Source: Anthoceros angustus (Eukaryota; Plantae; Anthocerotophyta). From it: DNA of 64,000 bases. The DNA is taken from positions 1,054,001 through 1,118,000 of the forward strand of contig MU008174.1 in the NCBI GenBank assembly GCA_010909165.1. Reading direction: 5' to 3'. Positions 200-36,384 of the stretch are shown here, one piece after another. The position numbers and the translations under genes were made by a program. The notes beneath the pieces were generated by a model, which worked only from the letters and a program-made list of their open reading frames with translations, made no database searches and was not told where the DNA came from. Numbering within the stretch: position 1 is the first letter of the stretch; the number at the start of each line of letters is the position of its first letter.

Positions 200-960
200 G
201 GCGACAGGACTACATCCTTTTGGTTCAATAGCTATTCACATCCTTGTCCTTACACCACACAACAGTGCACCAGAACCTTCGGCTGGCCCTTCTATCTTGA
301 GCGATGAGGCCATGGAAGCCTCCCAACAATGACTTTGCCGATCCAAAGTGCCGTTTCTGATCCAAAGTGTCAGAAACAATCGAGCTAGTTATGAGATTGA
401 ATGGCTATCCAGCCATGGAAGCAAAGTACTTGCGACCCTTGTGGACCAGTCCTTCATTACTGCATGCTACTAGAAGGCAAGTAAAAGTAGCATCATTAAG
501 CTGAACACCGGCAACTAGCATCTCCTCTAAACAAGCTAGCGCCTTGTGACCTTTATCACAAGTACCATACCCAAATATCAGCAACCTGGAGTGCATCTTC
601 CATATCACCACATTTTGCATATATGTCCACCAGGCATTACGTCATCTAGGAGTCCTCTTTCGACAATGTGTGAGTGAAGCTGGCTGCTCGTTTGCAAGGC
701 TCCAATGCTTCCACTACCTTCATAAGGCAAGAGAAAGTAATATGGACAGCCAAAATCAGCCCTTCCTCCTCCATTTGTCCATACACTGGCAAGCGCCTCT
801 TGTCCGAGCCCTTGCTGCCCACCTGCCACATCCTGCATTCCCCACAAGCCACATTCTTTTTCCCCACAAGCCACATTCTTTTTCCCCACAAGCCACATTC
901 TTTTTCCCCACAAGCCACATTCTTTGTGTCCATGCTGTCAAAAATAACTGGCAAGCATCT
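200..960 (-). pseudogene. Degenerate PLS-class PPR gene fragment
   Basis: ORFs 405..620 (KGHKALACLEEMLVAGVQLNDATFTCLLVACSNEGLVHKGRKYFASM, P2/L2-like) and 605..913 (ASQLHSHIVERGLLDDV, L-like) are broken by frameshifts and by an inserted 22-bp tandem repeat. Confidence 0.8.
841..925. repeat. 22-bp tandem repeat, ~3.9 copies (CCCACAAGCCACATTCTTTTTC), inside the PPR relic
   Basis: Units read directly at 841, 863, 885 and 907. Confidence 0.95.
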
Positions 961-1438: not shown

Positions 1439-2732
1439 CTAGATATCGTGAAAAATCAAGAAGCCCCCTTTGTACCGCCCACAAAAGATTTCCTCCAGGC
1501 GATACCGTTGGTTCCCAAGATGCCAACTCAGATATCCCTGAAAGAATTTCACAATCCTGTTTTTGATGACAGCAGAATCAGACCTATCCGCCAAGGCCAT
1601 CAGTCTTCTCCTGGAATGGATCACAGCCTGCATCCTGTGCCGAAGAGATTGAAGAAGCGGCAGGTTGTGAATCCTTGGACGGGTCACAACGTGGATGCAA
1701 TACTCTCCGTCCTGCATCTCCTTGTAAAAGGACAGCACATCGTTGCCGAAATCAAACGCATCGATAAGCTCAGGGACCATGGGGTTGAGCCTGTTGTAGA
1801 GGAAGTACTCATCTCCCCTCGCAGAGCCCGAGGACGATGTCTACATGATGACAAAGTATGCAAAAACCTCAGCAATCCCGGACCTGTACCGGATGAACCT
1901 GGGGAAGCATGTCGGCAGTGGTCTCCATCGGATACTCCTCGTAATGCTGCTCCTGCAAGTTGCCCTCGATGAAGTCGAAGGTGGACTTGATCATCAGGCT
2001 GTGCAGCCGGAGCTCCGTGGAGAGGATTGGGTTCTGGTCCGTCTTGAGGTAGGCGATGAGATCGTCCAGGGCCTGGTGGGCGGCCGGGGTACCGCCTGGA
2101 GTACTCTTGTGGGTCGGTGTACTTCATCTGGAACAAGCTCATGTCCTTCAGGTACCTCTCTCGCACCGCCCCCCAGAGCTTCCCTGCCAGATCGTCCACC
2201 ACCAGGACCAGAGCTGCGAAATGTGCGATCTTCGCTTGCAGGTCGACCGGTGGACGCTGTGCGCTAGATTCCCGTACGCAGCTCCCATTTTGATGTACCG
2301 GTCCGAGAGGTAGGATCCGGCGTTCGCTCTCACCCGTGCAGCGACTGCGTCCAGCCGCTGAGGGTAGCAGGACTCCCAGGAATCGGAGAAGGACATGCTC
2401 TGCAGGAAATCCATGTACACAGGCGTCAGCTCGCTGTTGTCGATGCCACCGCCACCTTCATCGATCACCGCCCTGCCAACGGCAGCAGGTAGCTTGGCAG
2501 GAGCAGCGGCCTCGCCCTGCACGCATCTCACCGTCACAGAAACAGAAGGAGAAGAAACACTCTCCGCCTGGGCATGCTTCTGCTCCAAGGTGGAAGAAAT
2601 GAATGGAAGTCTCAACAGCAAAGAGGAATCCGCAGCGCCTTGTTGTGGGAAATCTGCCACTGCTCTGCAGCTGCTGCTTCCAGTAATATTACCGACACAC
2701 CTCACACTCGCTGTGAAGCTGCACACATCCAT
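1439..2732 (-). pseudogene. Microbial-type terpene synthase (MTPSL), trichodiene-synthase-like, intronless; frameshifted in this sequence
   Basis: Joining frames gives ...YIKMGAAYGNLA/PVDLQAKIAHFAALVLVVDDLAGKLW.../AHQALDDLIAYLK...KSTFDFIEGNLQE.../FPRFIRYRSGIAEVFAYF...PELIDAFDFGNDVLSFYKE...FQGYLSWHLGNQRYRL. This contains the Asp-rich VDD, the RxxSG motif, the NSE/DTE motif (NDVLSFYKE) and the RY motif. About 3 frameshifts (~2255, ~2080, ~1905) and an in-frame TAG at 1841-1843. Likely start MDVCSF at 2732. Confidence 0.8.
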
Positions 2733-2863
2733 GTTGTGTATGTCAGATTCTCTATAACTTCGGGAACAAGGATCCGTCAGGGGCACACAAACAACGGGCA
2801 CACACGGCTGAGGGTGTGCTTGGCTTTTAAATTATTCCAGCAAGCAGCAATATTTCAGATACT

Positions 2864-2959
2864 TCGCCACACAACACTTATCACACTTGGTGCACTAACA
2901 TGGTGTCCCATCTCCTCGCCACACAACACTTATCACACTTGGTGCACTAACATAGTGTC
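2864..2959. repeat. 44-bp direct repeat (period 52) upstream of the terpene synthase
   Basis: TCGCCACACAACACTTATCACACTTGGTGCACTAACAT(G/A)GTGTC at 2864 and 2916. Confidence 0.9.
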
Positions 2960-2999
2960 TGATCAATCCTAACTGTGCACACAAACAATTCCGTCGCAA

Positions 3000-3600
3000 A
3001 CTTTGCTATGGAATTATGTAAGAGTTGATTCAAAAGTGAAGCTTGCTTCTCCTCAAACTGTTAGTGACCAGCCCTTCAGCTGACCACTGGGCTTCCACCC
3101 GACCCTTCAGCTGAAGTACTTTGAAGAGAGTTTTAAGTCTGAGTGCTGACTGATTGTACTCGTGCGCCGTGGCTGACTACATAGTGAAACGAGGATTTCC
3201 AAGACACACCAATGGCCTCCTGCAGACTACCTCCCCACTGTACACAGTTTTAGCACAGTGTACAGCAGAGATCGAGAAACAGCAGGTCAGAGTCTGTTTG
3301 CGCCAGAGGTTCCAGGGCTCCAACGGCCCCAGAAAGCTTCCCCTGCTGACACAACGTTTCCATTTCCGAAACTTCCTCTTCCCCCGTGTGTGACGATCCT
3401 GCAACCTGCAATTCCATCGCAAAATTTGCTCTGGAATTAACGAAGAGTTGATTCAAAGGTGAACCTTACTTGATCACTAACACCCATCAGCTCTCATCCC
3501 TGCTCCCTGCCGTTTTCTGGTTAATGCTTCCTCCATTTCTTCTGGAATTACCGAAGACTTTTGTACCCAAACTTTTAGTGACTCTCCCCTCAAACTCAAA
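3000..3600 (-). pseudogene. Highly degenerate PPR N-terminal relic
   Basis: Minus frame EMETLCQQGKLSGAVGALEPLAQTDSDLLFLDL resembles RRLCEEGQPSEAVAALELL at the start of the PPR at 9990. Further PPR-like pieces (SLLNQLL, FHYVVSHG) are interrupted by stops. Confidence 0.45.
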
Positions 3601-3864
3601 CTCTGCTGCCACAATTGCTGCGCATGTGCTTCACATACACTAAGAGAGCCCGCAACCATCAACCATGAGGAAATATTAAAACTCAACTGGTATGTTTTGA
3701 GCCAGATGAAGTAGTGCAACAACGAAAGCATGACTTCGTGCATGCATCCTCGTTCCTTCACAAATTGTAGAGTACCGAGTCCCACGACGAGAATTCGTCG
3801 TCAGTGGACTTCAAGAAAATTCTTCTCTTCTTCTTCTATCATATGAATGCAGTCAGCCGCTGCG

Positions 3865-3995
3865 TCCGTCTACAATATAAGTATTCACACACTCGAGCCG
3901 GCGCCGGCGTACCACTATAATATAATTCTCACACTCGAGCTGGGCGGACGTCTATAATATAATTCACACAATCGAGCCAGGCGTACGTCTACAAC
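3865..3995 (+). repeat. Three degenerate 37-45-bp units with a TATAATATAA-like core upstream of the dioxygenase
   Basis: Variants of CTATAATATAATT..CACACTCGAGC near 3870, 3916 and 3952. Confidence 0.75.
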
Positions 3996-4259
3996 AGGCC
4001 CGATGCCTATCCCGATCCCGAACCCGGCTCCAATCCCGGCAAACCGTGCATCGCTGCCCACGCGCAGGAAACCGCACCTTCTCCTTCTGCTCCGACGTTG
4101 CGTGGATTCGATGGTGTGGAATCTGATGAGATGCACACCGTGGGAAAGAGATTGCACAGCAGTATGAGAGGCTGGGTGAAGGAATGGGACAGCAATTGCA
4201 AGCGACGGGCACATCTCAATCGCAGATCTGCAAGTGCCTACCGAGCTAGCTCGATTTCC

Positions 4260-5567
4260 ATGGCCCTTCTCAGCCACCCGCTGCGCCTGTACACCCACGG
4301 CTCCAGAACTCCATGCCTGCCGGCTGCCCGGACTGGGGGAAGAATGATCACGACCCGATGCATGTGTAGCCACCTCGTATCCGCAGCGTCCTTGCAGCAA
4401 CATCTCCCTGAAACATGGAGCAGGGCGCAGCGGGAGCTGGTGGGCGGGACGCTGGACTTGGGCTCCCTGGACGTGAGCTCCACACGCCGCGCAGAGCTGG
4501 TGGAGGAGGTCCGGCATCGGGCGGAGGCCGGAGTGCTGTACGTGAGCAACTTCGGGGTGGATCCTGCCCTGGAGGCCCAGGTCCGGGATCTGGCACGGAC
4601 CTTCTTCTCGCAGCCCGCAGAGTACAAGACGAGGCTGAAAGTCGGCGGAGACGATCTGCATCTCCCGACATCGACGAACCTACCCGCAGCAGCGGCCCCG
4701 GACAACGTCTGGTTCCCGCAGAACGCGCGCGGCTACGCGTGCAAGTTCAGCACCTCGGTGCCGGATTCCGCCGCCCTGGCGGAGCTGGAAGCAAGCGACA
4801 ACGAGCCGGCGGGGTTCCGGGAACTCTTCCGCTCCATCGCCTACCCGGAATCCGAGCGGGCAGGCAACGTCTGGCCCGATTCCGCCCTCCCCGGATTCAA
4901 GCACGCAGCGGAGAAGTACTCGGCGCAGATGCAGCGGGCGGTGGAGTTCCTGGTGGGTCTGCTGGCGGAGGGGCTGGGTCTGCCGGCGTCGTATCTCTAC
5001 GAGGAGTACCGGGACGAGGTCGTCACCAACATGGTGCTGCTCAACTACCCGCCTCAGCAGCTTCCGGCCGGGCACATGGCGGCCCCCGCGCTGCCGTCGC
5101 ACACGGACGCCAACCTGCTCAACTTGAGCGTGTCTGATGTCCCGGGGTTGCAGTTCTTCCGGCGGGGCCAGTGGGTTACCGCCCCTGCCTTGCTGGGTAG
5201 CGCGCTGGTGAGCCTGGGGGAGGCCTTGGAGACCGTCAGCAACGGGAGGTACCGAGCTGCTTGTCACAGAGTGGTGTCGGGGCCCAGAAGCCGCCTCTCC
5301 ATAGTCACCTCGTTGCAGTTCGGGGCGACTACGGTCCTTGCTCCTGCCGCGCAGCTCATCGACGACGACAATCCGGCGCGCTACCGATCCAGACTGCAGA
5401 TCGAGCGCATCAGCAACCGGGAGAATTTGTCCAAGCGGGAGCGGAGCAAAGCGCCCATCATGCTCGACCCTGCCTCGCACCTGGACCCCATGTCCGACGT
5501 CTACACACTGGGCCGTCAGGACTTCATCAATGGGAAGCCGCTGCAGGATTGGGGTGTCACTGTTTGA
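4260..5567 (+). CDS. 2-oxoglutarate/Fe(II)-dependent dioxygenase (DIOX_N + 2OG-FeII_Oxy), intronless, with N-terminal extension
   Basis: Intact ORF 4098..5567, likely ATG at 4260 (MALLSHPLR). DIOX_N-like LDLGSL...RAELVEEVR...GVLYVSNFGVD, Fe ligands HTD (PSHTDANLL) and distal H (RYRAACHRVV), and the 2OG-binding RLS motif. Confidence 0.92.
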   Translation: MALLSHPLRLYTHGSRTPCLPAARTGGRMITTRCMCSHLVSAASLQQHLPETWSRAQRELVGGTLDLGSLDVSSTRRAELVEEVRHRAEAGVLYVSNFGVDPALEAQVRDLARTFFSQPAEYKTRLKVGGDDLHLPTSTNLPAAAAPDNVWFPQNARGYACKFSTSVPDSAALAELEASDNEPAGFRELFRSIAYPESERAGNVWPDSALPGFKHAAEKYSAQMQRAVEFLVGLLAEGLGLPASYLYEEYRDEVVTNMVLLNYPPQQLPAGHMAAPALPSHTDANLLNLSVSDVPGLQFFRRGQWVTAPALLGSALVSLGEALETVSNGRYRAACHRVVSGPRSRLSIVTSLQFGATTVLAPAAQLIDDDNPARYRSRLQIERISNRENLSKRERSKAPIMLDPASHLDPMSDVYTLGRQDFINGKPLQDWGVTV

Positions 5568-6057
5568 TGCCTTTTCTCTCTCTGCAACCGCCAGATTATA
5601 GAAAGAGAAGTTTTACTGTTTTTCTCTCACTTTTTACTTTTGGAATGAAAGTTAAAAATATTAACTTCGCATTATGCTCCAAGGAACATGTAACACGCTA
5701 GAAGGCTGCTGCTGAGTTGCTGAGGTTTGAACTCCCAGTACTGCTGGGCAGGTTGTTGCTGGAACTCCTCTGCAAGTTCAGCTGCAGCATGCTGTTCCTG
5801 TTGAACCGTAATCGATAACACCCATTAGCTCTGATCCCTGCCGTTTTCTGGTTATGCAATTCAGGAGGGGGTGCCACTATCTGAAGCTCGGAATACACAC
5901 CCCGTCGCCCTCATGTAGACTGAGAACTCTGCCCTCTCTCCCAAGTATTTCGGCTGGAGGGCTAGGTGGAAGCCCAGTGCTCAAGAGTTTTTTCATGAAT
6001 GTTCCAAGATGAACCAAGCGTGGTAATTTGCACATTCCTCAGGAGCATTTACATCCC

Positions 6058-9000
6058 CGGGAGGAAGTCTAAGCTGGCTTAGGACGAGCCTGGCTTGGCT
6101 CTCCTGCAAGTACCTGGAGGCTGAAGATCTCAGACACATTGTAGGCCTACGAACTCAACAACAGACTACCACCTGAAGTGCACTGAAATTGTGCAGGGAA
6201 CACCTTTCACTCACACTCTTGCTATCCCTAATTCGGAAGATGTCACGGCTTCGACCCTGCTCATAGACCTCACAGTACATCCACGAAGCATCCGGCGTGC
6301 CCATTTCTGAAAAGGACGGATGTAGCCTGTACTCTCTACCCGGGCATGGGTAGCTGTCGAGGATGATGTAGCTTGTGCTCCATCGTGGGCAGGCGGATAC
6401 TTTGTGGATGTAATGGGGAGGTCCGATGGCTCTGGGGAGATTTGGAACACACTTGTAGCAAACAGGTGAAACTATGCTGCGTGAACAAGGGCTATATAGG
6501 CCTGGTACAGTTGAGATGTGATTACCTGCACAAAGGAGACAGCAATTCAACTGCTACAAAGCTGAGACAGACCAGAGCTCTGTGCAGGATGTTACCTTCT
6601 GGCGTGATAAGAGCGTCAGGATAGCCCTTGGTTCTGTTCCCACTTCATGAACTGAAAGCAGGATACTGCACTCCAGCTGGAAGGGTTCCGGGCATGTGAG
6701 AAACACCTGCAGAGCCCATCTGTGATCTACCTGAACAGCGATGGTTGTACTGCTGTGCAAGATGTGATAAAACGATGCAGCTCTGCCGCTGGACTTGGTC
6801 ATCGACGCGGCACAGATGTAGCTCCAGAAGAATCAGCCCCACCTGAAGGTGCGCAGCTTGAAATGGCCTGCAGTGCGTCTCGAAATGTGCAAAACCCTCC
6901 TCGCAGCCAACACGTTCCGATATCCTCATGTCCCGGATAGACGCTGGGTTGATGAAGACCGGGTGACGTTGAGGAAGTGGCCCAGCTGCCCGGTTGATAC
7001 TTGAGTCCCACATGGTACAAGCGTCGGGAAGGCCACCCAGACAAAGGTGGGCAGCACCTAAGTCTTCCAGCGCTCTCCACTTCGAACACTCGGAAACCAT
7101 TCAAGCTCCATCCATCTTTGCCACTCGGCACTCACCACCCGTCCAGCCAAGCCATCAGATTGACTACACTTCCTTGAGTAGAAAGATAGCTCATCGGAGC
7201 GTTCAGCCTGATTCGGACTCGTCCCCAACAGCACTCACTCACGATGCAACGTCTGCTCAACCTGACCTGCATTCCAGGTCTTCCAACACTACCGCGACCT
7301 TGCAGCTTGCTCTCATTTTATGCTCGTGTTGCCTGTTTCTAGGGTTATGAGGCTAACCGAGGTCCGAATGCATCTTTGGCTTGAGAATGGTAGAAGCGGT
7401 CTTCGTGGCTTATCGCATGTATGTTTGGCTTGATGAGAATGGCAGAAGTGACAAGAGGAGCTCGACCTTTTGATGCCGGTGGCACCAACTATTTCTGGAC
7501 CTAGATGTTTATGTTGTGATTTTTCCGTCTTCCCATGGTTCTCCAGTAGGAGAAAATGAGGAGAGGTGGAGGCGTGGGCGTCCACTGGGTTGGCTGGGGC
7601 CTGGTTCAAGGCAGAGCGAGGCCAGGCAGCCCGTTGGAGGAATGGTGCAGGCAGATGTCGTCGGTGGCGGGCGTGGCGGAGCAGCGAAGATCTACAGCCA
7701 GCAGCTTTGGTTGGTATTGCAGTCGGTTTTGAAGAAATGGAGCTCCGTTGTATGGATGGATTCTTATCTGGCCTGGCTTACAGGTGAGGAGTGCAGAGCA
7801 GGTCTGGTGGGGAGGCCTGTGGTGGATTCTCCGAAGTGGTGGGCCAGGAGGAAGTCTAAGCTGGCTTAGGACGAGCCTGGCTTGGCTCTCCTGCAAGTAC
7901 CTGGAGGCTGAAGATCTCAGACACATTGTAGGCCTACGAACTCAACAACAGACTACCACCTGAAGTGCACTGAAATTGTGCAGGAACACCTTTCACTCAC
8001 TCTTGCTATCCCTAATTCGGAAGATGTCACGGCTTCGACCCTGCTCATAGACCTCACAGTACATCCACGAAGCATCCGGCATTTCTGAAAAGGACGGATG
8101 TAGCCTGTACTCTCTACCCGGGCATGGGTAGCTGTCGAGGATGATGTAGCTTGTGCTCCATCGTGGGCAGGCGGATACTTTGTGGATGTAATGGGGAGGT
8201 CCGATGGCTCTGGGGAGATTTGGAACACACTTGTAGCAAACAGGTGAAACTATGCTGCGTGAACAAGGGCTATATAGGCCTGGTACAGTTGAGATGTGAT
8301 TACCTGCACAAAGGAGACAGCAATTCAACTGCTACAAAGCTGAGACAGACCAGAGCTCTGTGCAGGATGTTACCTTCTGGCGTGATAAGAGCGTCAGGAT
8401 AGCCCTTGGTTCTGTTCCCACTTCATGAACTGAAAGCAGGATACTGCACTCCAGCTGGAAGGGTTCCGGGCATGTGAGAAACACCTGCAGAGCCCATCTG
8501 TGATCTACCTGAACAGCGATGGTTGTACTGCTGTGCAAGATGTGATAAAACGATGCAGCTCTGCCGCTGGACTTGGTCATCGACGCGGCACAGATGTAGC
8601 TCCAGAAGAATCAGCCCCACCTGAAGGTGCGCAGCTTGGAAATGGCCTGCAGTGCGTCTCGAAATGTGCAAAACCCCTCCTCGCAGCCAACACGTTCCGA
8701 TATCCTCATGTCCCGGATAGACGCTGGGTTGATGAAGACCGGGTGACGTTGAGGAAGTGGCCCAGCTGCCCGGTTGATACTTGAGTCCCACATGGTACAA
8801 GCGTCGGGAAGGCCACCCAGACAAAGGTGGGCAGCACCTAAGTCTTCCAGCGCTCTCCACTTCGAACACTCGGAAACCATTCAAGCTCCATCCATCTTTG
8901 CCCTCGGCACTCACCACCCGTCCAGCCAAGCCATCAGATTGACTACACTTCCTTGAGTAGAAAGATAGCTCATCGGAGCGTTCAGCCTGATTCGGACTCG

Positions 9001-9633
9001 TCCCCAACAGCACTCACTCACGATGCAACGTCTGCTCAACCTGACCTGCATTCCAGGTCTTCCAACACTACCGCGACCTTGCAGCTTGCTCTCATTTTAT
9101 GCTCGTGTTGCCTGTTTCTAGGGTTATGAGGCTAACCGAGGTCCGAATGCATCTTTGGCTTGAGAATGGTAGAAGCGGTCTTCGTGGCTTATCGCATGTA
9201 TGTTTGGCTTGATGAGAATGGCAGAAGTGACAAGAGGAGCTCGACCTTTTGATGCCGGTGGCACCAACTATTTCTGGACCTAGATGTTTATGTTGTGATT
9301 TTTCCGTCTTCCCATGGTTCTCCAGTAGGAGAAAATGAGGAGAGGTGGAGGCGTGGGCGTCCACTGGGTTGGCTGGGGCCTGGTTCAAGGCAGAGCGAGG
9401 CCAGGCAGCCCGTTGGAGGAATGGTGCAGGCAGATGTCGTCGGTGGCGGGCGTGGCGGAGCAGCGAAGATCTACAGCCAGCAGCTTTGGTTGGTATTGCA
9501 GTCGGTTTTGAAGAAATGGAGCTCCGTTGTATGGATGGATTCTTATCTGGCCTGGCTTACAGGTGAGGGGAGTGCAGAGCAGGTCTGGTGGGGGAGGCCT
9601 GTGGTGGATTCTCCGAAGTGGTGGGCCGGGAGG
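6058..9633. repeat. ~1.79-kb internal tandem duplication present only in copy 1
   Basis: GAGGAAGTCTAAGCTGGCTTAGG occurs at ~6060 and ~7848, with the junction CCAGGAGGA at 7844-7852. Copy 2 has a single unit at 24094-25885. Confidence 0.95.
6400..7000 (+). pseudogene. Degenerate PPR-like relic (repeated at ~8200-8800 and ~24450-25050)
   Basis: Fragments EIWNTLVA, DTALQL, VIKRCSSAAGLGH and GNGLQCVSKC echo PLS motifs (WNTLI, LLKACS, GNALVDMYAKC). Many stops. Confidence 0.35.
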
Positions 9634-12395
9634 GAGGTAAGTAATGTGGTCCTTTCGATGTGTAGCTTGCTGTTTGTAGATCAGGCCCATGTTGGGTAGG
9701 GCAGGCATTTGAATTATGGCAGCATTGCAGAAAAACTTCCATAATCCGGACTTCGTGCACAGCACATCAGGGGTGAACTTGTGGGTTGAGGAACGGGGAT
9801 CAGGAGACAGCGTTGTGAGGCCTATAGTTGAGCGTGGAGCTGAGTGTGAGGCCTCTGGCAGGTCGAGGTCGTCTTCTGGACTCTGTTGAGCTAGTTTTGA
9901 TGAGTTTAATGCCGTCTCTTCTGTTCTGACTACACAGAGACTTTGTATCTTGCAGGTGTGAGAATGATTCGGAGAAGATTGAGACACGGAGAAGACTGTG
10001 TGAGGAGGGGCAGCCGAGTGAGGCTGTGGCAGCCTTGGAGCTTTTGGTGGGAAAAGGAGCTCCGGTTGCCTTGTCTCTTTTTTATCGTGTCCTCAGAGGA
10101 TGCATATTACAGAAAGATTTGGTTCTTGGCAGGCGTGTGCACCACCTTGCTGTTCAGCGTGGGTATGATTCAAGCCCATTCTTGGCAAATCACTTCATCC
10201 GTATGTATGCTTCTCATGGGAGTTTGCGGGACGCGGCACAGGTGTTCAGCAAACTGGCTGCACCAGATCTTTTCACGTGGGCCTCCATTATTTTGGCACA
10301 TGCTGATCATGGACACCCTAAACAGGCCATAAAACTTTATCAACAGATGCGGCAATCGGCTGTGAAGCCAGACAGCTATATACTTGTGGCAGTTCTGAAA
10401 GCATGTACTCGGGCAGTGGATCTGGTTTCTGGCAAAGACGTCCATGCGGACATATTGGACTGTGCAATTGAGCCGAATGTGTTTGTTGGAAACTGCCTGG
10501 TCGACATGTATGCGAAATGTGGAAGTCTGGTCGATGCTCGGAGGGTGTTTGACAGCTTGCCCATGAAGACTGTGGTTACATGGAATTCAATGATTGCAGG
10601 ATATGCTCAGCACGGGCTTGGTCATGAGGCCCTTGAGCTCCATTCAAGGATGCAACGAGATGGCATCAGTGCCCCCAATAATGTGACTTTTCTGTGCCTG
10701 CTGAAGGCATGTGCTAGTGTGGGAGCTTTACATGAGGGGAAGGAGCTGCACTCGCAGATCAGGGAACGAGGCTTAGACTCGGATGTGGTGGTTGCCAGCA
10801 GCCTGGTGGACATGTATGCAAAATGTGGCAGCTTAGGAGATGCCCGAGCAGTGTTTGACAGATTGAGCAGGAGAGATGTGGTGGCCTGGACTGCCATGAT
10901 AACTGGATATGTGCAGCATGGGTTTGGTCAAGAAGCGCTTGCACTTTATGCGCGTATGCAACATGAGGGTGTTATTCAAGCCAATCGTGTCACCTTTGCA
11001 TGCCTCCTCAACGCTTGTGCCAGTGTCGGAGGTTTACGCCAGGGCAAGGAGCTTCACTCACAGATCCAGGAAAGCAGGCTGGAAGGTGATGTGGTTGTCG
11101 GCAGCAGCCTGGTGGACATGTATGCAAAATGTGGGAGCTTAGAGGATGCTCAGAGGGTTTTTGATAGACTGCCGACGAAGAACGTGGTGACATGGAATGC
11201 CATGTTTGGGGTTATGCTCAGCATGGACTCGGGCAGGAAGCACTGGATCTGTACAAGAGTATGCTGCTGGAGGCGTCACTCCAGCCGACCATGTGACGTT
11301 TTCGTGCCTGGTGAAAGCATGTGCGAGCATAGGAGCTGTGCATCAGGGGAAGCAACTCCACTCACACATCCAGGAAAGAGGACTTGAATCAGAGGATGTG
11401 CTGGCCAGCAGTCTGGTAGACATGTATGTCAAATTCGGGAGCTTGGATGATGCTCGGGAGCTGTTTGACAGATTGCCAGCAAAGATGCCGTGACATGGAA
11501 TGCTCTTTTGAATGGCTACGCCCAACACAACAATGTACAAATGGCAATGCAGTGCTTCGAAGATATGCGGCATCATGGTGTCCAACCCAACAGCTCAACA
11601 TTCGTGGGTCTACTTGTGGCATGTAGCCATGCTGGCCTGGTGGATGAAGGTAAGCAGTATTTTGCTGCAATGAAGGATGCCCATGGCATCGAGCCGTCAG
11701 TGTACCACTACAACTGCATGGTTGATCTCCTTGGACGGTCAGGCCGGCTGGATGAAGCAGAAAACCTATTGCAGGCCATGCCACACAACACCGACATCGT
11801 AGGCTGGATCTCTCTCCTGACCGCCTGCAAAAGCCATGGTGACGAAGCCCGGGCATGGAGGTGCTTCCACTCTGTCACTGCTCTGGAACCTCAAAACTCA
11901 GCTGCCTATGCTCTCCTGGCGAGCATATATGCCTCAACAGGCCGACGGAGAGAGGTAGAATCCATCGAGAACCTGAGAAAAGCTGCAGGTGCTTGCAAGA
12001 AGCCTGCTAGGGCCTGGATCGAGGTAAACAGCAGGGTTGCAACATTCATCGTTGGCGAAGAAAGGAATGACACATCCTCCAAGCTGAGCAGTGTGAATCA
12101 CCAGCTCGAAGACCCAGGACCTCATCTTCACGTCCAACACTCCAAGCCGGTGACTGAAGCAGAAAAGGAAGACGCCCTGTGTGGCCACGCTGAGAAACTG
12201 GCCTTAGCATACGGTCTTCTCAACACCCCAGACGGAACCACATTACTGGTCACCAAGAACCTTCGCATGTGCGATGACTGCCACAACGGCACCAAGATGA
12301 TGTCCAGGACGGAGAAGCGTGAAATCATCGTGAGAGACGCCCACCGTGTCCACCACTTCGTCGACGGCTGCTGTACCTGCGGCGACCGGCATTGA
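9516..12395 (+). CDS. PLS-E1-E2-DYW:KP pentatricopeptide repeat protein (C-terminal DRH), candidate organellar U-to-C RNA editing factor, copy 1
   Basis: Predicted exon 9516-9562 (MELRCMDGFLSGLAY, phase-2 GT) plus exon 9956-12395. 17 PLS motifs, E1/E2, KPARAWIEV in place of the PG box, HAEKLA, CDDCH and terminal CTCGDRH. Three 1-bp homopolymer deletions (~11210, ~11272, ~11476) are absent from copy 2. Confidence 0.92.
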
Positions 12396-12767
12396 CAGAG
12401 TCACTGTGACAGGCTGTATTTCAGATGACGCCAGTCTTGAAGTCCTCCTCACGTCAGCCGAGAATGTGAGTAGATAAGGTCGCTTGGTATTGTAGATGAG
12501 GTGGCATCGGTGTAAGAGCATCCCGCCTGCCGCCTCCCGACAAAACGCGTCTTCCCTTCCCGTCCAAACGGATGCGCAGATGCATGTAGATAGTGATGAG
12601 GTTAACAGAGAGCGGCCGTTGCCTCCAAGGACGCTGCATGACGTCTCTCCAGCGAGTCCAGGACGTAGGCATATATCCAACCAAAGCTGTTTCAGGGGCT
12701 TTTCCCAGTAAAGTGATCAGGTGAGACGTCATGTGCGAGGTGCAGCCTAGGGCGTGCACCGAGGCGG

Positions 12768-12837
12768 CAGCAACAGGGCCAATGAGAATCAGCAACAGGG
12801 CCAATGAGAAGCAGCAACAGGGCCAATGAGAAGCAGC
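12768..12837. repeat. 22-bp tandem repeat x3 (CAGCAACAGGGCCAATGAGAA[T/G]); also at ~29008-29077
   Basis: Read directly. Confidence 0.95.
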
Positions 12838-14520
12838 CACAGAGAGATGCACCTTTCTCGCCCTGTCCTCCAAGTTAGCGCGCATTCAACTCCATGGAAG
12901 CTACTTGTCGCACTGCAGTTCTCCGATCACGATCTTGGCGTCTTGTCGTACTTCTCATACACTGCGGCAGTTGGCAAGCTGCTTTGCTTGTTTGGAAAGA
13001 TCCCAAGCTAACTACGCGTTGCCCACGCTTCCACAGAGCGTACCGAGATATGGAAACCTCGAGACCGATCATTGATGCCTCTCGTGTCGCAGTACATACG
13101 TATGCGCACCAGCGGGTGCGGTGTAGTACAGTCATCTGCACCTCTTCACCGTCTCCATATGCTATGTGGTTTGAGGGTTTGAGCATGTCGTCCCTGAGTT
13201 CGAGCAGGCTTACATCCGTCTATGGAGTTGTGTGCGTGAGACCACAAATTTTTGGATTTGAGCTGATAATGTTTTAATCAAACATCCGAAGAAGCTGTTC
13301 TCGTTGCTGGACACTTCCACATGCGGGGCCAGGCCAGTTTATTCGAACCTGGCGTGAAATCTCCTATCCTACGTCTCTGCAAACGCCAACGAACACTCCA
13401 AAAGCCATGTAAACAGTGAAAGCAGGAAGAGCCATAGCCGGGCCACCTGTTGTCAGGACTCGGGTCGTAACCGATGCATGTTGGAACTTGGGCACCCAGG
13501 AATGGTGGGCCCGCCTCATCCACACCACCACCCGGCGTCGTTTTTCTTCACTATCCAGCCGGCAGGCCTCGCCGGTGCCGTACGGTACAGGTTACATGCA
13601 TGTATGTATGTACATATGTATATAACATAACATAACGGCTGGACAAATACAGTGAAACGGAGGCCAACAGCTGTCAGCGGCTTATCCATAAAAGTCGACT
13701 CCGAATTCGATTTGTGATTTCGAGGCATTGTCGCTTCAATGGCGTTCTCCAGTCTGGATTTATGTATTGCTTCCTACTGGATGAGTATGGCAACTGCATT
13801 ACATAATCTCCCAGTTCTAATCTTTCTAATCCTTAAGGACACACTCGTAGACATCCTCCTGAATCCTAAAGAGACTCGTAACATCCCCTTAAGCCTAAAG
13901 AGACACTAAGAGGTCACTGTAGACACCGTTCAATAGTATCCGAGTCAGTCTGCATATGGCTTCTGGTTGTGGAAAGTGGGGTGAGGTCAGTTTCTTACTT
14001 CAACAGTTGCCACATTTGTATCTGGAAATATCGTTGAGAGGGCCCAGTTTGAAAAGCCGGTCGTGAGTCACCGCCACCGGATGAAATGGAATGATGCCGC
14101 GGCATCGGAATCTGTCCACGTGAATATGAGCGCCTCCTTGGCCCCAGCACCTATGCCGTCTGTTTTTGACTGTGAGCGCTTCCACGGTAAGAGGGAGGTG
14201 GCAGAGAGCACAAGCCCGGCAGATCGAGGGGCGGAATTGGCAGAGGTCAGGGACGCAGGGCCCAGGGCCAGGCCAGGTCCCACGAAAGGCTGATCGCTTC
14301 CGGCAACGACAAGCTTCGGGAGGGGCAAACAGTAGGAAGACAGAAGAGAGAGCAAAGTGGGCACGGAAGGCCGGCAGGTATTTAAGCGTTGCAAGGCTTC
14401 TGGGGGGAAGTGGAAACGAGGAGCCAGTGGAGGCGCAGATAGTGGGCAATGGAGCTCTGAATTCGCTGCGAGGAGGAGGGAAAATTGGCGCGGAGAGGAT
14501 CTGAGGAGGAGGACGGCAAG

Positions 14521-15659
14521 ATGGGGTCGCAGAGAGTGGGAGGATGCTTCAGCGGGGGCCGCGAAGGGGTGAGGGAGCCGGGGCATGCAAGAAAGTCAGG
14601 AAACCCTCGGGCTATCTGTGGTGGTGCTGGCGTCGGATCTGGCTGTGGATACGCATGACTTGGGCCTGCATGCTCACCGTCTCCTGCTCCAGCACCGCCA
14701 GCACCGCGTCTGACGCCTCCTCGGAAGACTTCGAGAATGATGATTTCCTGGACCTGGAGGAGCTCGAATTCCTGCGCTTCGAGGGGGTGGACAAGGAGGG
14801 CCGCCAAATTGTGCGCCTCGTCGGCAAGTTTCTCCCAGGTATGTATGATTCCGGTCTGGTTGCTGCAGCCTTGCAATGCCGGTGACGGGATGTCCTGTTG
14901 GGCAAGGTTGTTGGTCTGATGTGTCCGCCCGCCGCCTGCAGCTACTGTTGTGGACGGCAGGAGGCTCAAGGCCTTCGTGCAGCGGAAGATTGTGCAGGAG
15001 CTTAAGGACGGGTCTTTCTGTCTCGTATACTTCCACTCCAATGTCCAGAGTGGGGACAACTCCCCTGGAATGTTCACTCTCAGGTCCATATACGAGTCTT
15101 TGCCGTGCGAGTATAAGCAGAGGCTTGAAGTGGTGTACTTCCTGCACCCCGGCCTGCGCTCCCGTCTGCTGCTTGGCACCTTTGGAAGGTTCTTCTTGAC
15201 CGAGAGGTATGCTTGGCTTGCCCCCGCTTTCTTTCTCAGACAGCTAAGCTTCCCGTCCCGGGATGCTGGTGTTGCACAAAGTTCTTAGCTTCGCTTCCTT
15301 GAGTTCCTGCAGGCTCTACTGGAAGATTCAGTATGTGAGCCGCCTGGAGTTCCTGTGGGACTTCATCAGGAAGGGACAAGTGCAAGTCCCTGAGCATGTC
15401 ATTGAGCACGACCAAGAGCTTGAAACCAGGCCCCTGATGGACTATGGCTTGGAGACCGACCCTTTACAAAATGCTGACCTGCCTGCCTCGGGCGCCAACC
15501 TTGCTTTCAACAGATATTCTAGCTCATATGCCTACAGGTGAGGTTCCTGACGCTTGTGCATACTTGTCATACCGGAGTATTTGTGTCTGGAAACAGGATC
15601 CCTGCGATAGTCAGAGGAGCCTGGACTAATCTGTCAAACTCATTCCCTTTTGCAGGTAA
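14521..15659 (+). CDS. CRAL-TRIO/BNIP2 (BCH, GDAP2-like Sec14-type) domain protein, 4 exons, copy 1
   Basis: Exons ~14521-14838, 14942-15206, 15313-15537 and 15656-15659 with GT-AG introns. They splice to ...FLRFEGVDKEGRQIVRLVGKFLPATVVDGRRLK...FCLVYFHSNVQ...LEVVYFLHPGLRSRLLL...LYWKIQYVSRLEFLW...QVPEHVIEHD...YAYR*. Exon 1 5' part has indels relative to copy 2. Confidence 0.88.
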
Positions 15660-16385
15660 CAGAACTTGACGACCAACCTTCGCCAGACACATCGAAGTAT
15701 GTGTGGTACTATCCCTTGTATCATAGGGGGGGTCTGCAGACCCCTAAACAGTCTTCATCCTCGTCCATTGAATATGGCATGCATAGTTCACGCACATACT
15801 GCAGAGTTCATAGATCGCTTTCTGCCATATCTGGAATAGACGTTGTAGCACCAGCAGCAGGTCCGCTGTTCATCGGGGACAGGAAACCTGCGGAACTTCC
15901 TTTCTCTGCAATTAGTGTACAAAGAGTAAATATGCAGAGTGCTTTCTCACTTGCACAAAAAGTAAATATACAGTGTGCTTTCTCACTTGCACTTCCTATA
16001 ATCTGTTTAAGATTGTTCCATGTTGTTCCATGTGTTCTGGCCTGCGAATCAAACTGCAAGTATTGGTGTTTTCCCACGTCAATTGTGTAACATCATATCA
16101 ACAGCGAGCAAACTGTAAAGTATTGGCGTCGTTTTCCCACATCAAGTGTTCCACATCAAAGCAACAGCGAGGAGCAGGAAGATGCAGGAACACGGCACTG
16201 CAGCAAAACATGTATGCTTCACAAGTGGAGACCTTGACAGCAAGCTATTCGACGTCCACAAATTGCACTCTTCCCTCCACCGCTGTGCATGTTTGCAACG
16301 TCAGCCGTCCTGCACCGCCAGTCCTGTGCATGTTGGCAACTTGAACCTTCTTGCACGTCTCTTAAAGTAATGGATACCAGGTCTT

Positions 16386-16630
16386 GCTAGGCGTCTTCTA
16401 TACCGGAGGCTCGATGCAACCTACATGCAACCAGGGGACAAACAAAAAGGAACATTCTGCAACTCAGAAACCATCTCCAACAATCAGTTAAAAAATCAGA
16501 CATCTAGGCGTCTTCTATACTTCGGCACACCGTAGGCTCGATGCAACCTACATGCAACCAGGGGACAAACAAGAAGGAACATTCTGCAACTCAGAAACCA
16601 TCTCCAACAATCAGTTAAAAAATCAGACAT
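16386..16630. repeat. ~120-bp tandem duplication between the convergent CRAL-TRIO and USP genes (recurs at ~17970, ~19550, ~32630)
   Basis: CTAGGCGTCTTCTATAC...GGCTCGATGCAACCTACATGCAACCAGGG...AATCAGACAT occurs twice. Confidence 0.9.
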
Positions 16631-17027
16631 CCAGCAGGGAACTCTAAGCTGTACAAGTGCTGAGATTATGTATTGAATCGGTCTTCTAAATACTGTATCT
16701 CTGAAAGAAAACGTAGAAGCTGCAACACTGTGACTTGCCTTCTCAAAGGCTTCAAGGCTCACAACGAGACAGGAGAGTTTCAAGATCTGCATTGCCTGAA
16801 GTTTTACGAATTGCTAAACCTATAAAACCTTCCGATCACACCTATCCACAGGTAGCCCTTCATGTAGCATAAGGTCACTTCATCCATTCAAGATCCATTC
16901 GCAGATTCCTGAACCCGGCCGATGAGTCTTCTCACCAAAAACAAAATAAAGGAGTAACAATTGCATCATCCCGCAACAACGAAACTCCCATCCGATCTCT
17001 GACGCTTCCACAACGAGGGCGGGAAGC

Positions 17028-17338
17028 TCAGAACGAGGGAACCGGCATGAGAGCCTCAGCGTCCTTTTCCTCCAGCAACCTCACCACCACTACAGGCACG
17101 TCGCAATGGTGCACGCAGTAGTCACTGACACTCCCAAGCCGCGCCTTCCTGGAGCGCTTGGCCGCGCCAAAGCCCCGGCTTCCCATGATCACGGCAGCAG
17201 CTCCAGGCGCTCCACTTCCAAGCAAATACGCTCCTTCATGTCGTGGTCCTTGACGATATGAATCTTGTGCGGAATTTTGGCTTCCACAAGCGGCTTGGCC
17301 AGATCGTCCGCCTTGGACGCAGTGAGTGCCTCGAATTC
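17028..17338 (-). pseudogene. 3' half of the USP gene (rearrangement product)
   Basis: Encodes EFEALTASKADDLAKPLVEAKIPHKIHIVKDHDMKERICLEVERL...GSVSDYCVHHCDVPVVVV and is cut at CTCGAATTC (17330-17338). Confidence 0.85.
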
Positions 17339-17892
17339 CTGCGCTTCGAGGGGTGGACAAGGAGGGCCCAAATTGTGCGCCTCGTCGGCAAGTTTCTCCC
17401 AGGTATGTATGATTCCGGTCTGGTTGCTGCAGCCTTGCAATGCCGGTGACGGGATGTCCTGTTGGGCAAGGTTGTTGGTCTGATGTGTCCGCCCGCCGCC
17501 TGCAGCTACTGTTGTGGACGGCAGGAGGCTCAAGGCCTTCGTGCAGCGGAAGATTGTGCAGGAGCTTAAGGACGGGTCTTTCTGTCTCGTATACTTCCAC
17601 CCAATGTCCAGAGTGGGGACAACTCCTGGAATGTTCACTCTCAGGTCCATATACGAGTCTTTGCCGTGCGAGTATAAGCAGAGGCTTGAAGTGGTGTACT
17701 TCCTGCACCCCGGCCTGCGCTCCCGTCTGCTGCTTGGCACCTTTGGAAGGTTCTTCTTGACTGAGAGGTATGCTTGCTTTCTTTCTCAGACAGCTAAGCT
17801 TCCCGTCCTGGGATGCTGGTGTTGCACAAAGTTCTTAGCTTCGCTTCCTTGAGTTCCTGCAGGCTCTACTGGAAGATTCAGTATGTGAGCCG
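17330..17892 (+). pseudogene. Internal fragment of the CRAL-TRIO gene (end of exon 1 to start of exon 3)
   Basis: Matches 14763-15342 and is bounded by microhomologies CTCGAATTC and AGCCG. Confidence 0.9.
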
Positions 17893-18608: not shown

Positions 18609-18925
18609 TCAGAACGAGGGAACCGGCATGAGAGCCTCAGCGTCCTTTTCCTCCAGCAACCTCACCACCACTACAGGCACGTCGCAATGGTGCACGCAGT
18701 AGTCACTGACACTCCCAAGCCGCGCCTTCCTGGAGCGCTTGGCCGCGCCAAAGCCCCGGCTTCCCATGATCACGGCAGCAGCTCCAGGCGCTCCACTTCC
18801 AAGCAAATACGCTCCTTCATGTCGTGGTCCTTGACGATATGAATCTTGTGCGGAATTTTGGCTTCCACAAGCGGCTTGGCCAGATCGTCCGCCTTGGACG
18901 CAGTGAGTGCCTCGAATTCATCCTC
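18609..18925 (-). pseudogene. Second 3' half copy of the USP gene
   Basis: Same USP C-terminal peptide, joined at TTCATCCTC (18917-18925) to DNA matching 15753 onward. Confidence 0.85.
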
Positions 18926-20131
18926 GTCCATTGAATATGGCATGCATAGTTCACGCACATACTGCAGAGTTCATAGATCGCTTTCTGCCATATCTGGAAT
19001 AGACGTTGTAGCACCAGCAGCAGGTCCGCTGTTCATCGGGGACAGGAAACCTGCGGAACTTCCTTTCTCTGCAATTAGGAGTGTACAAAGAGTAAATATG
19101 CAGAGTGCTTTCTCACTTGCACAAAAAGTAAATATACAGTGTGCTTTCTCACTTGCACTTCCTATAATCTGTTTAAGATTGTTCCATGTTGTTCCATGTG
19201 TTCTGGCCTGCGAATCAAACTGCAAGTATTGGTGTTTTCCCACGTCAATTGTGTAACATCATATCAACAGCGAGCAAACTGTAAAGTATTGGCGTCGTTT
19301 TCCACATCAAGTGTTCCACATCAAAGCAACAGCGAGGAGCAGGAAGATGCAGGAACACGGCACTGCAGCAAAACATGTATGCTTCACAAGTGGAGACCTT
19401 GACAGCAAGCTATTCGACGTCCACAAATTGCACTCTTCCCTCCACCGCTGTGCATGTTTGCAACGTCAGCCGTCCTGCACCGCCAGTCCTGTGCATGTTG
19501 GCAACTTGAACCTTCTTGCACGTCTCTTAAAGTAATGGATACCAGGTCTTGCTAGGCGTCTTCTATACCGGAGGCTCGATGCAACCTACATGCAACCAGG
19601 GACAAACAAAAGGAACATTCTGCAACTCAGAAACCATCTCCAACAATCAGTTAAAAATCAGACATCTAGGCGTCTTCTATACTTCGGCACACCGTAGGCT
19701 CGATGCAACCTACATGCAACCAGGGACAAACAAGAAGGAACATTCTGCAACTCAGAAACCATCTCCAACAATCAGTTAAAAATCAGACATCCAGCAGGGA
19801 ACTCTAAGCTGTACAAGTGCTGAGATTATGTATTGAATCGGTCTTCTAAATACTGTATCTCTGAAAGAAAACGTAGAAGCTGCAACACAGTGTGACTTGC
19901 CTTCTCAAAGGCTTCAAGGCTCACAAACGAGACAGGAGAGTTTCAAGATCTGCATTGCCTGAAGTTTTACGAATTGCTAAACCTATAAAAACCTTCCGAT
20001 CTCACACCTATCCACAGGTAGCCCTTCATGTAGCATAAGGTCACTTCATCCATTCAAGATCCATTCGCAGATTCCTGAACCCGGCCGATGAGTCTTCTCA
20101 CCAAAAACAAAATAAAGGAGTAACAATTGCA

Positions 20132-20740
20132 TCATCCCGCAACAACGAAACTCCCATCCGATCTCTGACGCTTCCACAACGAGGGCGGGAAGCTCAGAAC
20201 GAGGGAGCCGGCATGAGCCTCAGCGTCCTTTTCCTCCGGCAACCTCACCACCACTACAGGCACGTCGCAATGGTGCACGCAGTAGTCACTGACACTCCCA
20301 AGCCGCGCCTTCCTGGAGCGCTTGGCCGCGCCAAAGCCCCGGCTTCCCATGATCACGGCAGCAGCTCCCAGGCGCTCCACTTCCAAGCAAATACGCTCCT
20401 TCATGTCGTGGTCCTTGACGATATGAATCTTGTGCGGAATTTTGGCTTCCACAAGCGGCTTGGCCAGATCGTCCGCCTTGGACGCAGTGAGTGCCTCGAA
20501 TTCATCCTCCATCCGCTGCTGCTGCGCCGGCGATGCGCTCTTGTGGCCCGGCTCCGACGCAGGCCCCCAGTCCGCCCCGTACAGCACGCTCGTCGGCCGC
20601 ACATGCAGCAGAATCACATGGTCCCCGGGCCGCAGGTAGTTCGCCACGGCCCAGCGTACTGCGTATGCGCTCTCATCGCTCAGATCCACAGGTATGGCGA
20701 TCTTTCTGTCCGAACTCGGCACCGACCCTGACAGTGGCAT
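20132..20740 (-). CDS. Universal stress protein A-like (USP domain, PHOS32/34-like), copy 1
   Basis: 202-aa ORF: RKIAIPVDLSDESAYAVRWAVANYLRPGDHVILLHV...IMGSRGFGAAKR...LGSVSDYCVHHCDVPVVVV. Confidence 0.93.
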   Translation of the reverse strand: MPLSGSVPSSDRKIAIPVDLSDESAYAVRWAVANYLRPGDHVILLHVRPTSVLYGADWGPASEPGHKSASPAQQQRMEDEFEALTASKADDLAKPLVEAKIPHKIHIVKDHDMKERICLEVERLGAAAVIMGSRGFGAAKRSRKARLGSVSDYCVHHCDVPVVVVRLPEEKDAEAHAGSLVLSFPPSLWKRQRSDGSFVVAG

Positions 20741-36351: not shown

Positions 36352-36384
36352 TCGGGGCGGTGATTGGTGGCTCCCTCCGCTCCA

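What the first reader, a model, noticed from the sequence alone, without database searches (positions are those of the whole stretch)
1439..5567. Divergent microbial-type terpene synthase + intronless 2OG dioxygenase pair: candidate terpenoid gene cluster in a seed-free plant
Seen: a trichodiene-synthase-like class I TPS (VDD, NDVLSFYKE, RY) and a 2OG-Fe(II) dioxygenase start ~1.5 kb apart, head to head. Both are intronless and GC-rich, unlike the spliced genes nearby. Established: MTPSL genes of non-seed plants are related to fungal and bacterial terpene synthases, and 2OGDs are common terpene-tailoring enzymes. Inference: a scaffold-plus-oxidation module sharing a bidirectional promoter. I do not know of an MTPSL-2OGD cluster being described, but cannot check the literature.
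Basis: partly seen in the sequence, partly recalled or inferred. Interest (0 to 1): 0.75.

Follow-up and report, generated by a model that had tools for sequence, protein, structure and literature searches.

The report
Broken fungal-type terpene synthase beside dioxygenase
In a hornwort-like plant genome, a fungal-type terpene synthase gene whose reading frame is broken in four places sits head to head with an intact but unusually divergent oxygenase gene; only this adjacency suggests that they work together.

Summary
On the minus strand (2471 to 1439) lies a trichodiene-synthase-family (TRI5, PF06330) class I terpene synthase with VVDD, NDVLSFYKE and RY motifs. On the plus strand (4260 or 4344 to 5567) lies an intronless 2OG/Fe(II) dioxygenase. 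Their possible start codons are 1.4-1.9 kb apart.

The terpene synthase is not one open frame. Its coding signal passes through three frame changes and an in-frame TAG. It is probably a young pseudogene. However, duplicated DNA in the same window shows 72 small indels against 8 substitutions, the pattern of long-read assembly errors, so the frame changes alone prove little.

The dioxygenase is intact: one frame, GC3 83%, all iron and 2OG ligands, and a confident fold model. It has no full-length relative above about 33% identity among 1.84 billion proteins. Two database fragments share its odd C-terminal tail. In a tree it falls between plant DOXC enzymes and bacterial IPNS-family oxygenases.

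Fungal-type terpene synthases in hornworts were published in 2020. This scan had already noted other such loci in this genome. I found no paper pairing one with a 2OG dioxygenase. As assembled, this is a candidate relic at most, not a demonstrated cluster.

The parts
2253..2471 (-). TPS piece A (frame 0): N-terminal helices upstream of the first metal-binding motif. Possible start codons in this frame are at 2732 and 2414.
   Evidence: GC3 is 0.73-0.83 in this frame only. The piece gives no Pfam or PDB hit on its own, and a word search was blank.
2086..2244 (-). TPS piece B (frame 2) with the aspartate-rich motif VVDD (D codons 2196-2191). The first frame change lies at about 2262-2244.
   Evidence: GC3 is 0.77-0.90 in frame 2. 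The junction is shown. The piece gives no independent database hit.
1899..2084 (-). TPS piece C (frame 0). The second frame change lies at about 2100-2084, beside runs of C.
   Evidence: GC3 is 0.77-0.97 in frame 0. The junction is shown.
1844..1906 (-). TPS piece D1 (frame 1). The third frame change lies at about 1912-1900, beside a CCCC run.
   Evidence: GC3 switches to frame 1. The junction is shown.
1841..1843 (-). In-frame TAG inside the TPS coding frame.
   Evidence: GC3 stays in frame 1 on both sides of it.
1439..1840 (-). TPS piece D2 with the natural stop at 1441-1439. It holds the TRI5-homologous C-terminal half, with the NSE motif NDVLSFYKE (1744-1718) and RY (1507-1502).
   Evidence: Pfam TRI5 at 3.8e-13. 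PDB trichodiene synthase at 1.7e-10, aligned to residues 206-311. The nearest Atlas clusters are Ascomycota terpene synthases.
2472..4259 (.). Divergent intergenic region (GC 49.7%). It contains three tandem units of about 40 nt with TATAAT-like cores (3864-3979) and a 63-nt direct repeat (2986-3048 and 3409-3471).
   Evidence: No promoter function was tested.
4260..5567 (+). Intact intronless 2OG/Fe(II) dioxygenase (436 aa from ATG 4260, or 407 aa from ATG 4344). In the 407-aa numbering the conserved residues are H253 (5100-5102), D255 (5106-5108), H308 (5265-5267), R317 (5292-5294) and S319 (5298-5300). A family-specific C-terminal tail follows, from about 5450 to 5564.
   Evidence: Pfam. 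Single-frame GC3 of 0.8-0.93. Conserved residues. AlphaFold2 model with pLDDT 80.7 and pTM 0.83. Foldseek best hits are ANS, HSL1 and H6H at 6e-26 to 1e-23. The tail is shared with fragment P0044.
5675..17338 (.). First copy of a tandemly duplicated block (second copy 23718-33579, 98-99% identical). It begins 108 nt after the dioxygenase stop codon. It is not part of the gene pair but marks its right-hand boundary.
   Evidence: Self-BLAST. Indel-to-substitution count.

Best explanation
The locus holds a fungal-type (TRI5-family, MTPSL) sesquiterpene-synthase-like gene copy that is most likely a young pseudogene. It lies head to head, 1.4-1.9 kb away, with an intact and probably active 2OG/Fe(II) dioxygenase of an orphan lineage.

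Shown:
- Both gene identities.
- The four breaks in the TPS frame as assembled.
- The integrity of the dioxygenase: one frame, strong codon bias, the His-Asp-His iron triad, Arg-x-Ser for 2OG, and a confident double-stranded beta-helix model.

Inferred:
- The TPS no longer makes a full-length enzyme, because its two metal-binding motifs lie in different frames and a TAG separates them.
- The pair therefore does not now work as a cyclase-plus-oxidase module.
- The adjacency is either a relic of such a module or chance.

If the TPS once worked, it would have ionised a prenyl diphosphate through the DD and NSE magnesium sites. The dioxygenase would hydroxylate or desaturate a small molecule, spending 2OG and O2. 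Its substrate is unknown.
For: - TPS identity.
- Frame path from translation and independently from GC3.
- The TAG at 1843-1841 is a substitution-type lesion. Substitutions are rare in this assembly (8 in 9.5 kb between duplicate copies), so it is unlikely to be an error.
- The dioxygenase, 1.8 kb away, has no break over 1.2-1.47 kb. This argues against a uniformly high local error rate.
- Dioxygenase integrity.
- The C-terminal tail and the loop before HxD are conserved in fragments P0044 and P0067. With the window protein they form a clade with 97% support, which indicates a real protein family under constraint.
- Three of the four annotated TRI5-domain genes of Anthoceros angustus are also intronless (PMC7027989 supplement).
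Against: - The same window shows the signature of residual long-read errors: 72 gap events against 8 substitutions between two 9.5-kb copies, mostly 1-2 nt, with 42 of the 65 short gaps beside a same-base run.
- Two of the three TPS frame changes sit beside C runs, so they could be artefacts.
- GC3 remains very high (up to 0.97) and all catalytic motifs are intact, as expected of a living gene.
- The assignment of pieces A-C to the TPS has no independent database support.
- No expression data were available for either gene.
Confidence: 0.6

Rival explanations
1. The TPS is intact in the living plant and its breaks are assembly errors. The pair would then be a working two-gene terpenoid module transcribed divergently from a shared promoter.
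For: - The indel-dominated error signature in the same window.
- Frame changes beside C runs.
- Undecayed GC3 and motifs.
- In the A. angustus gene lists another TRI5-type gene, AANG002888, has consecutive gene numbers with two CYP85-clan P450s.
Against: - The in-frame TAG is not an indel-type lesion.
- The neighbouring dioxygenase ORF has no error over 1.2 kb or more.
- There is no evidence of co-expression or conserved linkage.
- The dioxygenase has no relative with a terpenoid role.
Confidence: 0.2
2. The adjacency is chance. A dead TPS copy happens to lie beside an unrelated dioxygenase in a gene-dense, rearranging region rich in PPR genes.
For: - The genome is compact (14,629 genes in 119 Mb), so divergent pairs 1-2 kb apart are common.
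- Many enzyme families count as 'tailoring' enzymes. By my rough reckoning, some TPS locus beside one of them is not unexpected.
- The pair abuts a recent tandem duplication that did not copy it.
Against: A dioxygenase as the immediate neighbour of one of only about five TRI5-type loci is fairly unlikely by chance (a few per cent, rough estimate). A second TRI5-type locus beside oxidases hints at a pattern.
Confidence: 0.35
3. Both genes came together from a microbe, as a piece of a microbial biosynthetic cluster.
For: - Both genes are intronless and more GC-rich than the window.
- The TPS family is accepted as fungus-derived in bryophytes (PMC7027989).
- The dioxygenase is not nested in the plant DOXC clade. 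It shares 'YPPQ' plus a long loop before HxD, and 'LPGFK', with bacterial IPNS-family oxygenases.
Against: - The dioxygenase shows no fungal affinity. Named best hits are land plants. Solved fungal enzymes score far lower than plant ones. Nearest Atlas clusters are oomycete and streptophyte.
- Its tree position is on the path between plant and bacterial groups with weak support (83 and 65).
- If the dioxygenase is microbial at all its affinities are bacterial, while the TPS is fungal-type, so the donors would differ.
Confidence: 0.05

Closest known systems
Fungal-type MTPSL (TRI5-domain) genes of hornworts and liverworts, e.g. AANG014095, AANG014097, AANG002888 and AANG006699 of Anthoceros angustus (Zhang et al. 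2020, PMC7027989)
   Same: The TRI5 Pfam domain, a single alpha-domain class I architecture, no introns (as in three of the four published genes), the NSE motif and RY, and a hornwort-like genomic setting rich in PPR genes.
   Different: This copy is frame-broken and carries a stop codon in the assembly. I could not map it to any published gene id. Its N-terminal part found no relative by word search.
Trichodiene synthase of Fusarium (PDB 1kiy, 1jfa)
   Same: The C-terminal half aligns to residues 206-311, including N-D-x-x-S-x-x-x-E and the RY pair.
   Different: The match is distant (E 1.7e-10 over 106 residues). The first motif is VVDDLAG rather than a DDxxD-type motif. The product and substrate are unknown.
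Plant DOXC-class 2OG dioxygenases (anthocyanidin synthase, hyoscyamine 6-beta-hydroxylase, HIS1/HSL1)
   Same: DIOX_N plus 2OG-FeII_Oxy domains, the HxD...H triad and RxS. These are the best sequence and fold matches among solved structures, and the named best database hits are land plants.
   Different: Identity is only 22-33%. The protein lies outside the 98%-supported clade of plant sequences in my tree. It has a roughly 40-residue insertion after the N-terminal domain, a longer loop before HxD and a roughly 35-residue C-terminal tail.
Bacterial isopenicillin-N-synthase-family oxygenases (Variovorax, Acidimicrobiales, Caulobacteraceae; COG3491-type)
   Same: 35-38% identity over the catalytic core, 'YPPQ' with a long loop before HxD, and 'LPGF[KR]' after the WP motif.
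   Different: It lacks their long 'GPNxWP' loop and is not nested among them (support 90 for the bacterial group excluding it).
MpMTPSL2-MpCPT5 mini-cluster of Marchantia polymorpha (bioRxiv 10.64898/2026.07.16.738752)
   Same: An MTPSL gene head to head with a second pathway gene, with start codons about 1.5 kb apart.
   Different: There the partner is a cis-prenyltransferase that supplies the substrate, both genes are intact, and co-expression, knockouts and a bidirectional promoter were shown. None of this is shown here.

Membership tests
TRI5-family microbial-type terpene synthase (MTPSL, PF06330) | Pfam TRI5 match above the gathering score | tested here: met
   49.5 bits against a cut-off of 25.2, but only for profile positions 200-309 of 362.
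TRI5-family microbial-type terpene synthase (MTPSL, PF06330) | Second metal-binding NSE motif (N-D-x-x-S-x-x-x-E) and the RY pair | tested here: met
   NDVLSFYKE at 1744-1718 and RY at 1507-1502, aligned to the same motifs of 1kiy.
TRI5-family microbial-type terpene synthase (MTPSL, PF06330) | First aspartate-rich motif upstream at the expected spacing | tested here: inconclusive
   VVDDLAG lies about 150 codons upstream, but in another reading frame. The piece has no database match of its own.
TRI5-family microbial-type terpene synthase (MTPSL, PF06330) | One continuous reading frame encoding the whole alpha domain | tested here: not met
   Three frame changes and a TAG in the assembly. Assembly error is not excluded.
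Plant DOXC-class 2OG/Fe(II) dioxygenase | DIOX_N plus 2OG-FeII_Oxy domains with HxD...H and RxS | tested here: met
   Model pLDDT is above 90 over the core.
Plant DOXC-class 2OG/Fe(II) dioxygenase | Phylogenetic position inside the plant DOXC radiation | tested here: inconclusive
   It is excluded from the 52-row plant clade (98% support). It sits on the path between the plant side and the bacterial side, with supports of 83 and 65. The tree is unrooted, quick-search, and the branch is long.
Plant biosynthetic gene cluster (terpenoid) | Neighbouring genes for at least two different enzyme classes of one pathway | tested here: inconclusive
   Two enzyme classes are adjacent. A shared pathway is not shown.
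Plant biosynthetic gene cluster (terpenoid) | All member genes intact | tested here: not met
   The TPS is broken as assembled.
Plant biosynthetic gene cluster (terpenoid) | Co-expression or a shared promoter | not testable with these tools
   No expression data are available here. The intergenic repeats are descriptive only.
Plant biosynthetic gene cluster (terpenoid) | Linkage conserved in related species | not testable with these tools
No hornwort genome collection is on hand. Metagenome scans gave only relatives at 22% identity.

The most novel reading that the evidence does not exclude
The pair is a live or only recently disabled two-gene terpenoid module of hornworts. In it, a horizontally acquired fungal-type terpene synthase was coupled, across a divergent promoter, to a lineage-specific 2OG dioxygenase. 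That dioxygenase belongs to a previously unrecognised clade lying between plant DOXC and bacterial IPNS-family enzymes. This would be the first MTPSL-2OGD pairing described.
Probability: 0.15. Interest if true: 0.6.

Novelty: new member of a known kind. Interest (0 to 1): 0.3.

Why it matters
Fungal-type terpene synthases in bryophytes are a textbook case of gene transfer into plants. How such genes are wired into plant metabolism is only now being worked out, and the Marchantia MTPSL2-CPT5 pair is the first proven mini-cluster. A hornwort terpene synthase coupled to a dioxygenase would be a second, different design.

As it stands, the synthase looks dead or mis-assembled, so the locus mainly offers three things:
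- One more copy, probably unannotated, for the birth-and-death history of this gene family.
- An orphan dioxygenase lineage worth placing properly in the 2OG oxygenase tree.
- A practical warning that frameshifts in this assembly are unreliable evidence of gene death.

Tried and rejected
- **Word search of the dioxygenase.** Only 27-32% identical hits, so I ran the full HMMER search.
- **Word search of the TPS N-terminal piece inside the 217-aa ORF.** Blank. The length window of that tool kept the 133-aa C-terminal piece from reaching full-length relatives, so no intact TPS homologue was obtained. The frame changes could therefore not be placed against a homologue.
- **Pfam and PDB searches of TPS pieces A-C alone.** No TPS hit.
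- **NCBIfam.** Nothing.
- **tblastn of all pieces against the window.** No paralogue.
- **Two metagenome scans with alignments of the dioxygenase clade.** Only two loci at 22% identity, which are of no use for synteny.
- **The search of earlier findings by sequence.** Blank.
- **Positive control with a universal stress protein of the window.** The best hit was an unnamed 89% Logan protein, then liverworts at 76-77%. The databases therefore hold no annotated hornwort proteome, and 'no close relative' of the dioxygenase is weak evidence of absence.
- **Retrocopy origin of the dioxygenase.** Considered and dropped, because no poly(A) remnant follows the stop codon.
- **Identity with the published Ascomycota-like 2OG oxygenase AANG013869.** Considered unlikely, because this protein shows no fungal affinity.
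- **Joined read-through of the TPS.** I did not build one. Pieces were searched apart, by reference.
Full report
**What is there**

On the minus strand, translation of 2900-1300 in three frames shows a protein-like sequence that cannot be read in one frame. I cut it into five pieces:
- A: 2471-2253, frame 0
- B: 2244-2086, frame 2
- C: 2084-1899, frame 0
- D1: 1906-1844, frame 1
- D2: 1840-1442, frame 1

A TAG at 1843-1841 separates D1 from D2. The natural stop is at 1441-1439.

Only D2 has database support. It matches Pfam TRI5 PF06330 at 3.8e-13 (49.5 bits against a cut-off of 25.2) over profile positions 200-309 of 362. It also matches solved trichodiene synthase 1kiy at 1.7e-10, aligned to residues 206-311. 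The language-model atlas puts it nearest to Ascomycota terpene synthase clusters.

NDVLSFYKE is at 1744-1718, RY at 1507-1502, and VVDD at 2196-2191, about 150 codons upstream.

**Is the frame path real?**

Pieces A, B and C give no Pfam or PDB match alone, and a word search with piece A was blank. I therefore looked for evidence that does not depend on homology.

Third-position GC in 90-nt windows is 0.73-0.97 in exactly the assigned frame of each piece. It switches at about 2250, 2100 and 1920. The junctions leave no room for introns, because the pieces abut or overlap.

As assembled, the gene therefore has three frame changes (about 2262-2244, 2100-2084 and 1912-1900) and one nonsense codon. 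The two metal-binding motifs lie in different frames.

**Pseudogene or assembly error?**

The window contains a recent tandem duplication: 5675-17338 against 23718-33579, at 98-99% identity. Over 9.5 kb the two copies differ by 8 substitutions but by 72 gap events. Of these, 65 are 1-2 nt long and 42 of those sit beside a same-base run.

Real divergence is dominated by substitutions, so this ratio is the mark of residual long-read consensus errors. The pattern fits the Nanopore, wtdbg and Pilon assembly of Anthoceros angustus (PMC7027989). Earlier notes of this scan name that species as the source, but I did not verify this.

Two of the three TPS frame changes lie beside C runs and could be such errors.

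Two points argue for a real pseudogene:
- The TAG is a substitution-type lesion, and substitutions are rare in this assembly.
- The dioxygenase 1.8 kb away is unbroken over 1.2-1.47 kb.

I put a real, young pseudogene at about 0.75. This figure concerns the TPS alone and is higher than the 0.6 given for the whole best explanation. GC3 and the motifs have not yet decayed.

**The dioxygenase**

The ORF 4098-5567 has in-frame ATGs at 4131, 4164, 4260 and 4344. GC3 rises to 0.8-0.93 from about 4380 and stays in one frame to about 5500.

It carries DIOX_N and 2OG-FeII_Oxy. Numbered from ATG 4344, it keeps H253, D255, H308, R317 and S319.

An AlphaFold2 model built on 92 sequences has pLDDT 80.7 and pTM 0.83, with the core above 90. 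Confidence is low only in the insertion at about residues 100-160 and in the tail at 370-407. Foldseek's best solved matches are anthocyanidin synthase, HSL1 and hyoscyamine 6-beta-hydroxylase, at 6e-26 to 1e-23. This agrees with the sequence search of the PDB.

No poly(A) remnant follows the stop codon, so nothing marks the gene as a retrocopy.

**Relatives of the dioxygenase**

The word search found nothing above 32% identity. The exhaustive HMMER search of 1.84 billion representatives gave 3,725 hits, but the best full-length ones are only 30-33% identical.

Two short Logan fragments are closer. P0044 is 40% identical and includes the unusual roughly 35-residue C-terminal tail, ending at the same residue. 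P0067 is 46% identical and shares the lengthened loop before HxD.

Every organism-named protein among the top-ranked hits I looked up is a land plant: Rumex, Linum, Oryza, Pohlia, Calypogeia, Riccia, Diphasiastrum and others.

In a quick maximum-likelihood tree of 92 sequences:
- The window protein joins P0044 and P0067 (97% support).
- This trio lies outside the 52-row clade that holds all the named plant proteins (98% support).
- It sits on the path to a 30-row group.
- Of the ten proteins I looked up in that group, those with organism names are Variovorax, Acidimicrobiales and Caulobacteraceae, plus one protist transcriptome entry.
- The two flanking splits have only 83 and 65 support, and the tree is unrooted.

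The motifs are mixed. The short loop before WP is plant-like. 'YPPQ' with a long loop before HxD, and 'LPGFK', are as in the bacterial group. The atlas lists oomycete and streptophyte clusters as nearest, not fungal ones.

The origin is therefore unresolved. It is a DOXC-like enzyme of an orphan lineage.

A control search with a universal stress protein from the window found an unnamed 89% hit and then liverworts at 76-77%. The window is thus from a land plant without an annotated proteome in these databases. 'No close relative' is weak evidence of absence in other hornworts.

**Do the two genes work together?**

Nothing beyond adjacency says so. Synteny could not be tested, and no expression data are available here.

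The intergenic 1.8 kb holds short direct repeats, including three tandem units of about 40 nt with TATAAT-like cores at 3864-3979. Their function is unknown.

By rough reckoning (inference, not measured), with 14,629 genes and several dozen DOXC-like genes, a given TPS locus has about a 1% chance of a dioxygenase neighbour. If any tailoring family counts, at least one such pairing among about five loci is unremarkable.

There is a precedent. In Marchantia, MpMTPSL2 and MpCPT5 form a proven mini-cluster with a bidirectional promoter.

**Comparison with the literature**

Zhang et al. 2020 reported four TRI5-domain MTPSL genes in A. angustus as fungus-derived, three of them intronless. They also reported a separate Ascomycota-like intronless 2OG oxygenase on another scaffold. 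I could not map my window to their gene ids.

No paper in the searchable library pairs an MTPSL with a 2OG dioxygenase.

**Verdict**

The cluster reading is unproven and, as assembled, unlikely to be functional.

The TPS is one more member, probably dead, of a published family. This scan had already found other fungal-type terpene synthase loci in this genome on other DNA (s1-680318, s1-305944). The dioxygenase is the more unusual gene.

I built no mended or joined version of the TPS. The pieces were searched apart, by reference.

Noticed in passing
window 5675-17338 vs 23718-33579 (also 18917-23697 vs 31993-36854): A large recent tandem duplication of about 18 kb carrying PPR and universal-stress-protein genes. 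The two copies differ by 72 small indels but only 8 substitutions over 9.5 kb, which looks like residual long-read assembly error. ORF lengths of the PPR gene differ between the copies, as such errors would produce.
   Followed up: partly
window 5450-5564; proteins P0044 and P0067: The dioxygenase has a roughly 35-residue C-terminal tail (LDPxSHLD...FINGxxxQxWGxT) shared with an unnamed Logan fragment. A second fragment shares its long loop before HxD. The two fragments break at about the same place, which may mark an intron that the window gene lacks.
   Followed up: partly
window 20132-20740 (-), 17028-17708 (-): Universal stress protein (PHOS32/34-like) gene copies inside nested tandem repeats of about 1.6 kb. 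The best named relatives are liverworts at 76-77% identity.
   Followed up: partly
window 46930-48735 (+): Pieces of a Copia-type retrotransposon (Pol_BBD, integrase core and an SH3-like domain), split over several ORFs.
   Followed up: no
window 41853-43146 vs 43145-44385: A GC-rich (about 63%) tandem pair at 83% identity with long ORFs on both strands and no Pfam match.
   Followed up: no
window 2864-2964, 2986-3048/3409-3471, 3864-3979: Short direct repeats in the TPS-dioxygenase intergenic region, including three tandem units of about 40 nt with TATAAT-like cores, 280-400 nt upstream of ATG 4260.
   Followed up: no
literature: PMC7027989 supplement: Of the four published TRI5-type genes of A. 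angustus, only AANG006699 is said to have introns. If gene models were drawn around frame breaks like those seen here, such 'introns' could be artefacts. AANG002888 is numbered next to a DYW PPR gene and two CYP85-clan P450 genes.
   Followed up: no
window 405-620 (-) and upstream: A PLS-class PPR gene runs off the left end of the window, directly downstream of the TPS stop codon.
   Followed up: no
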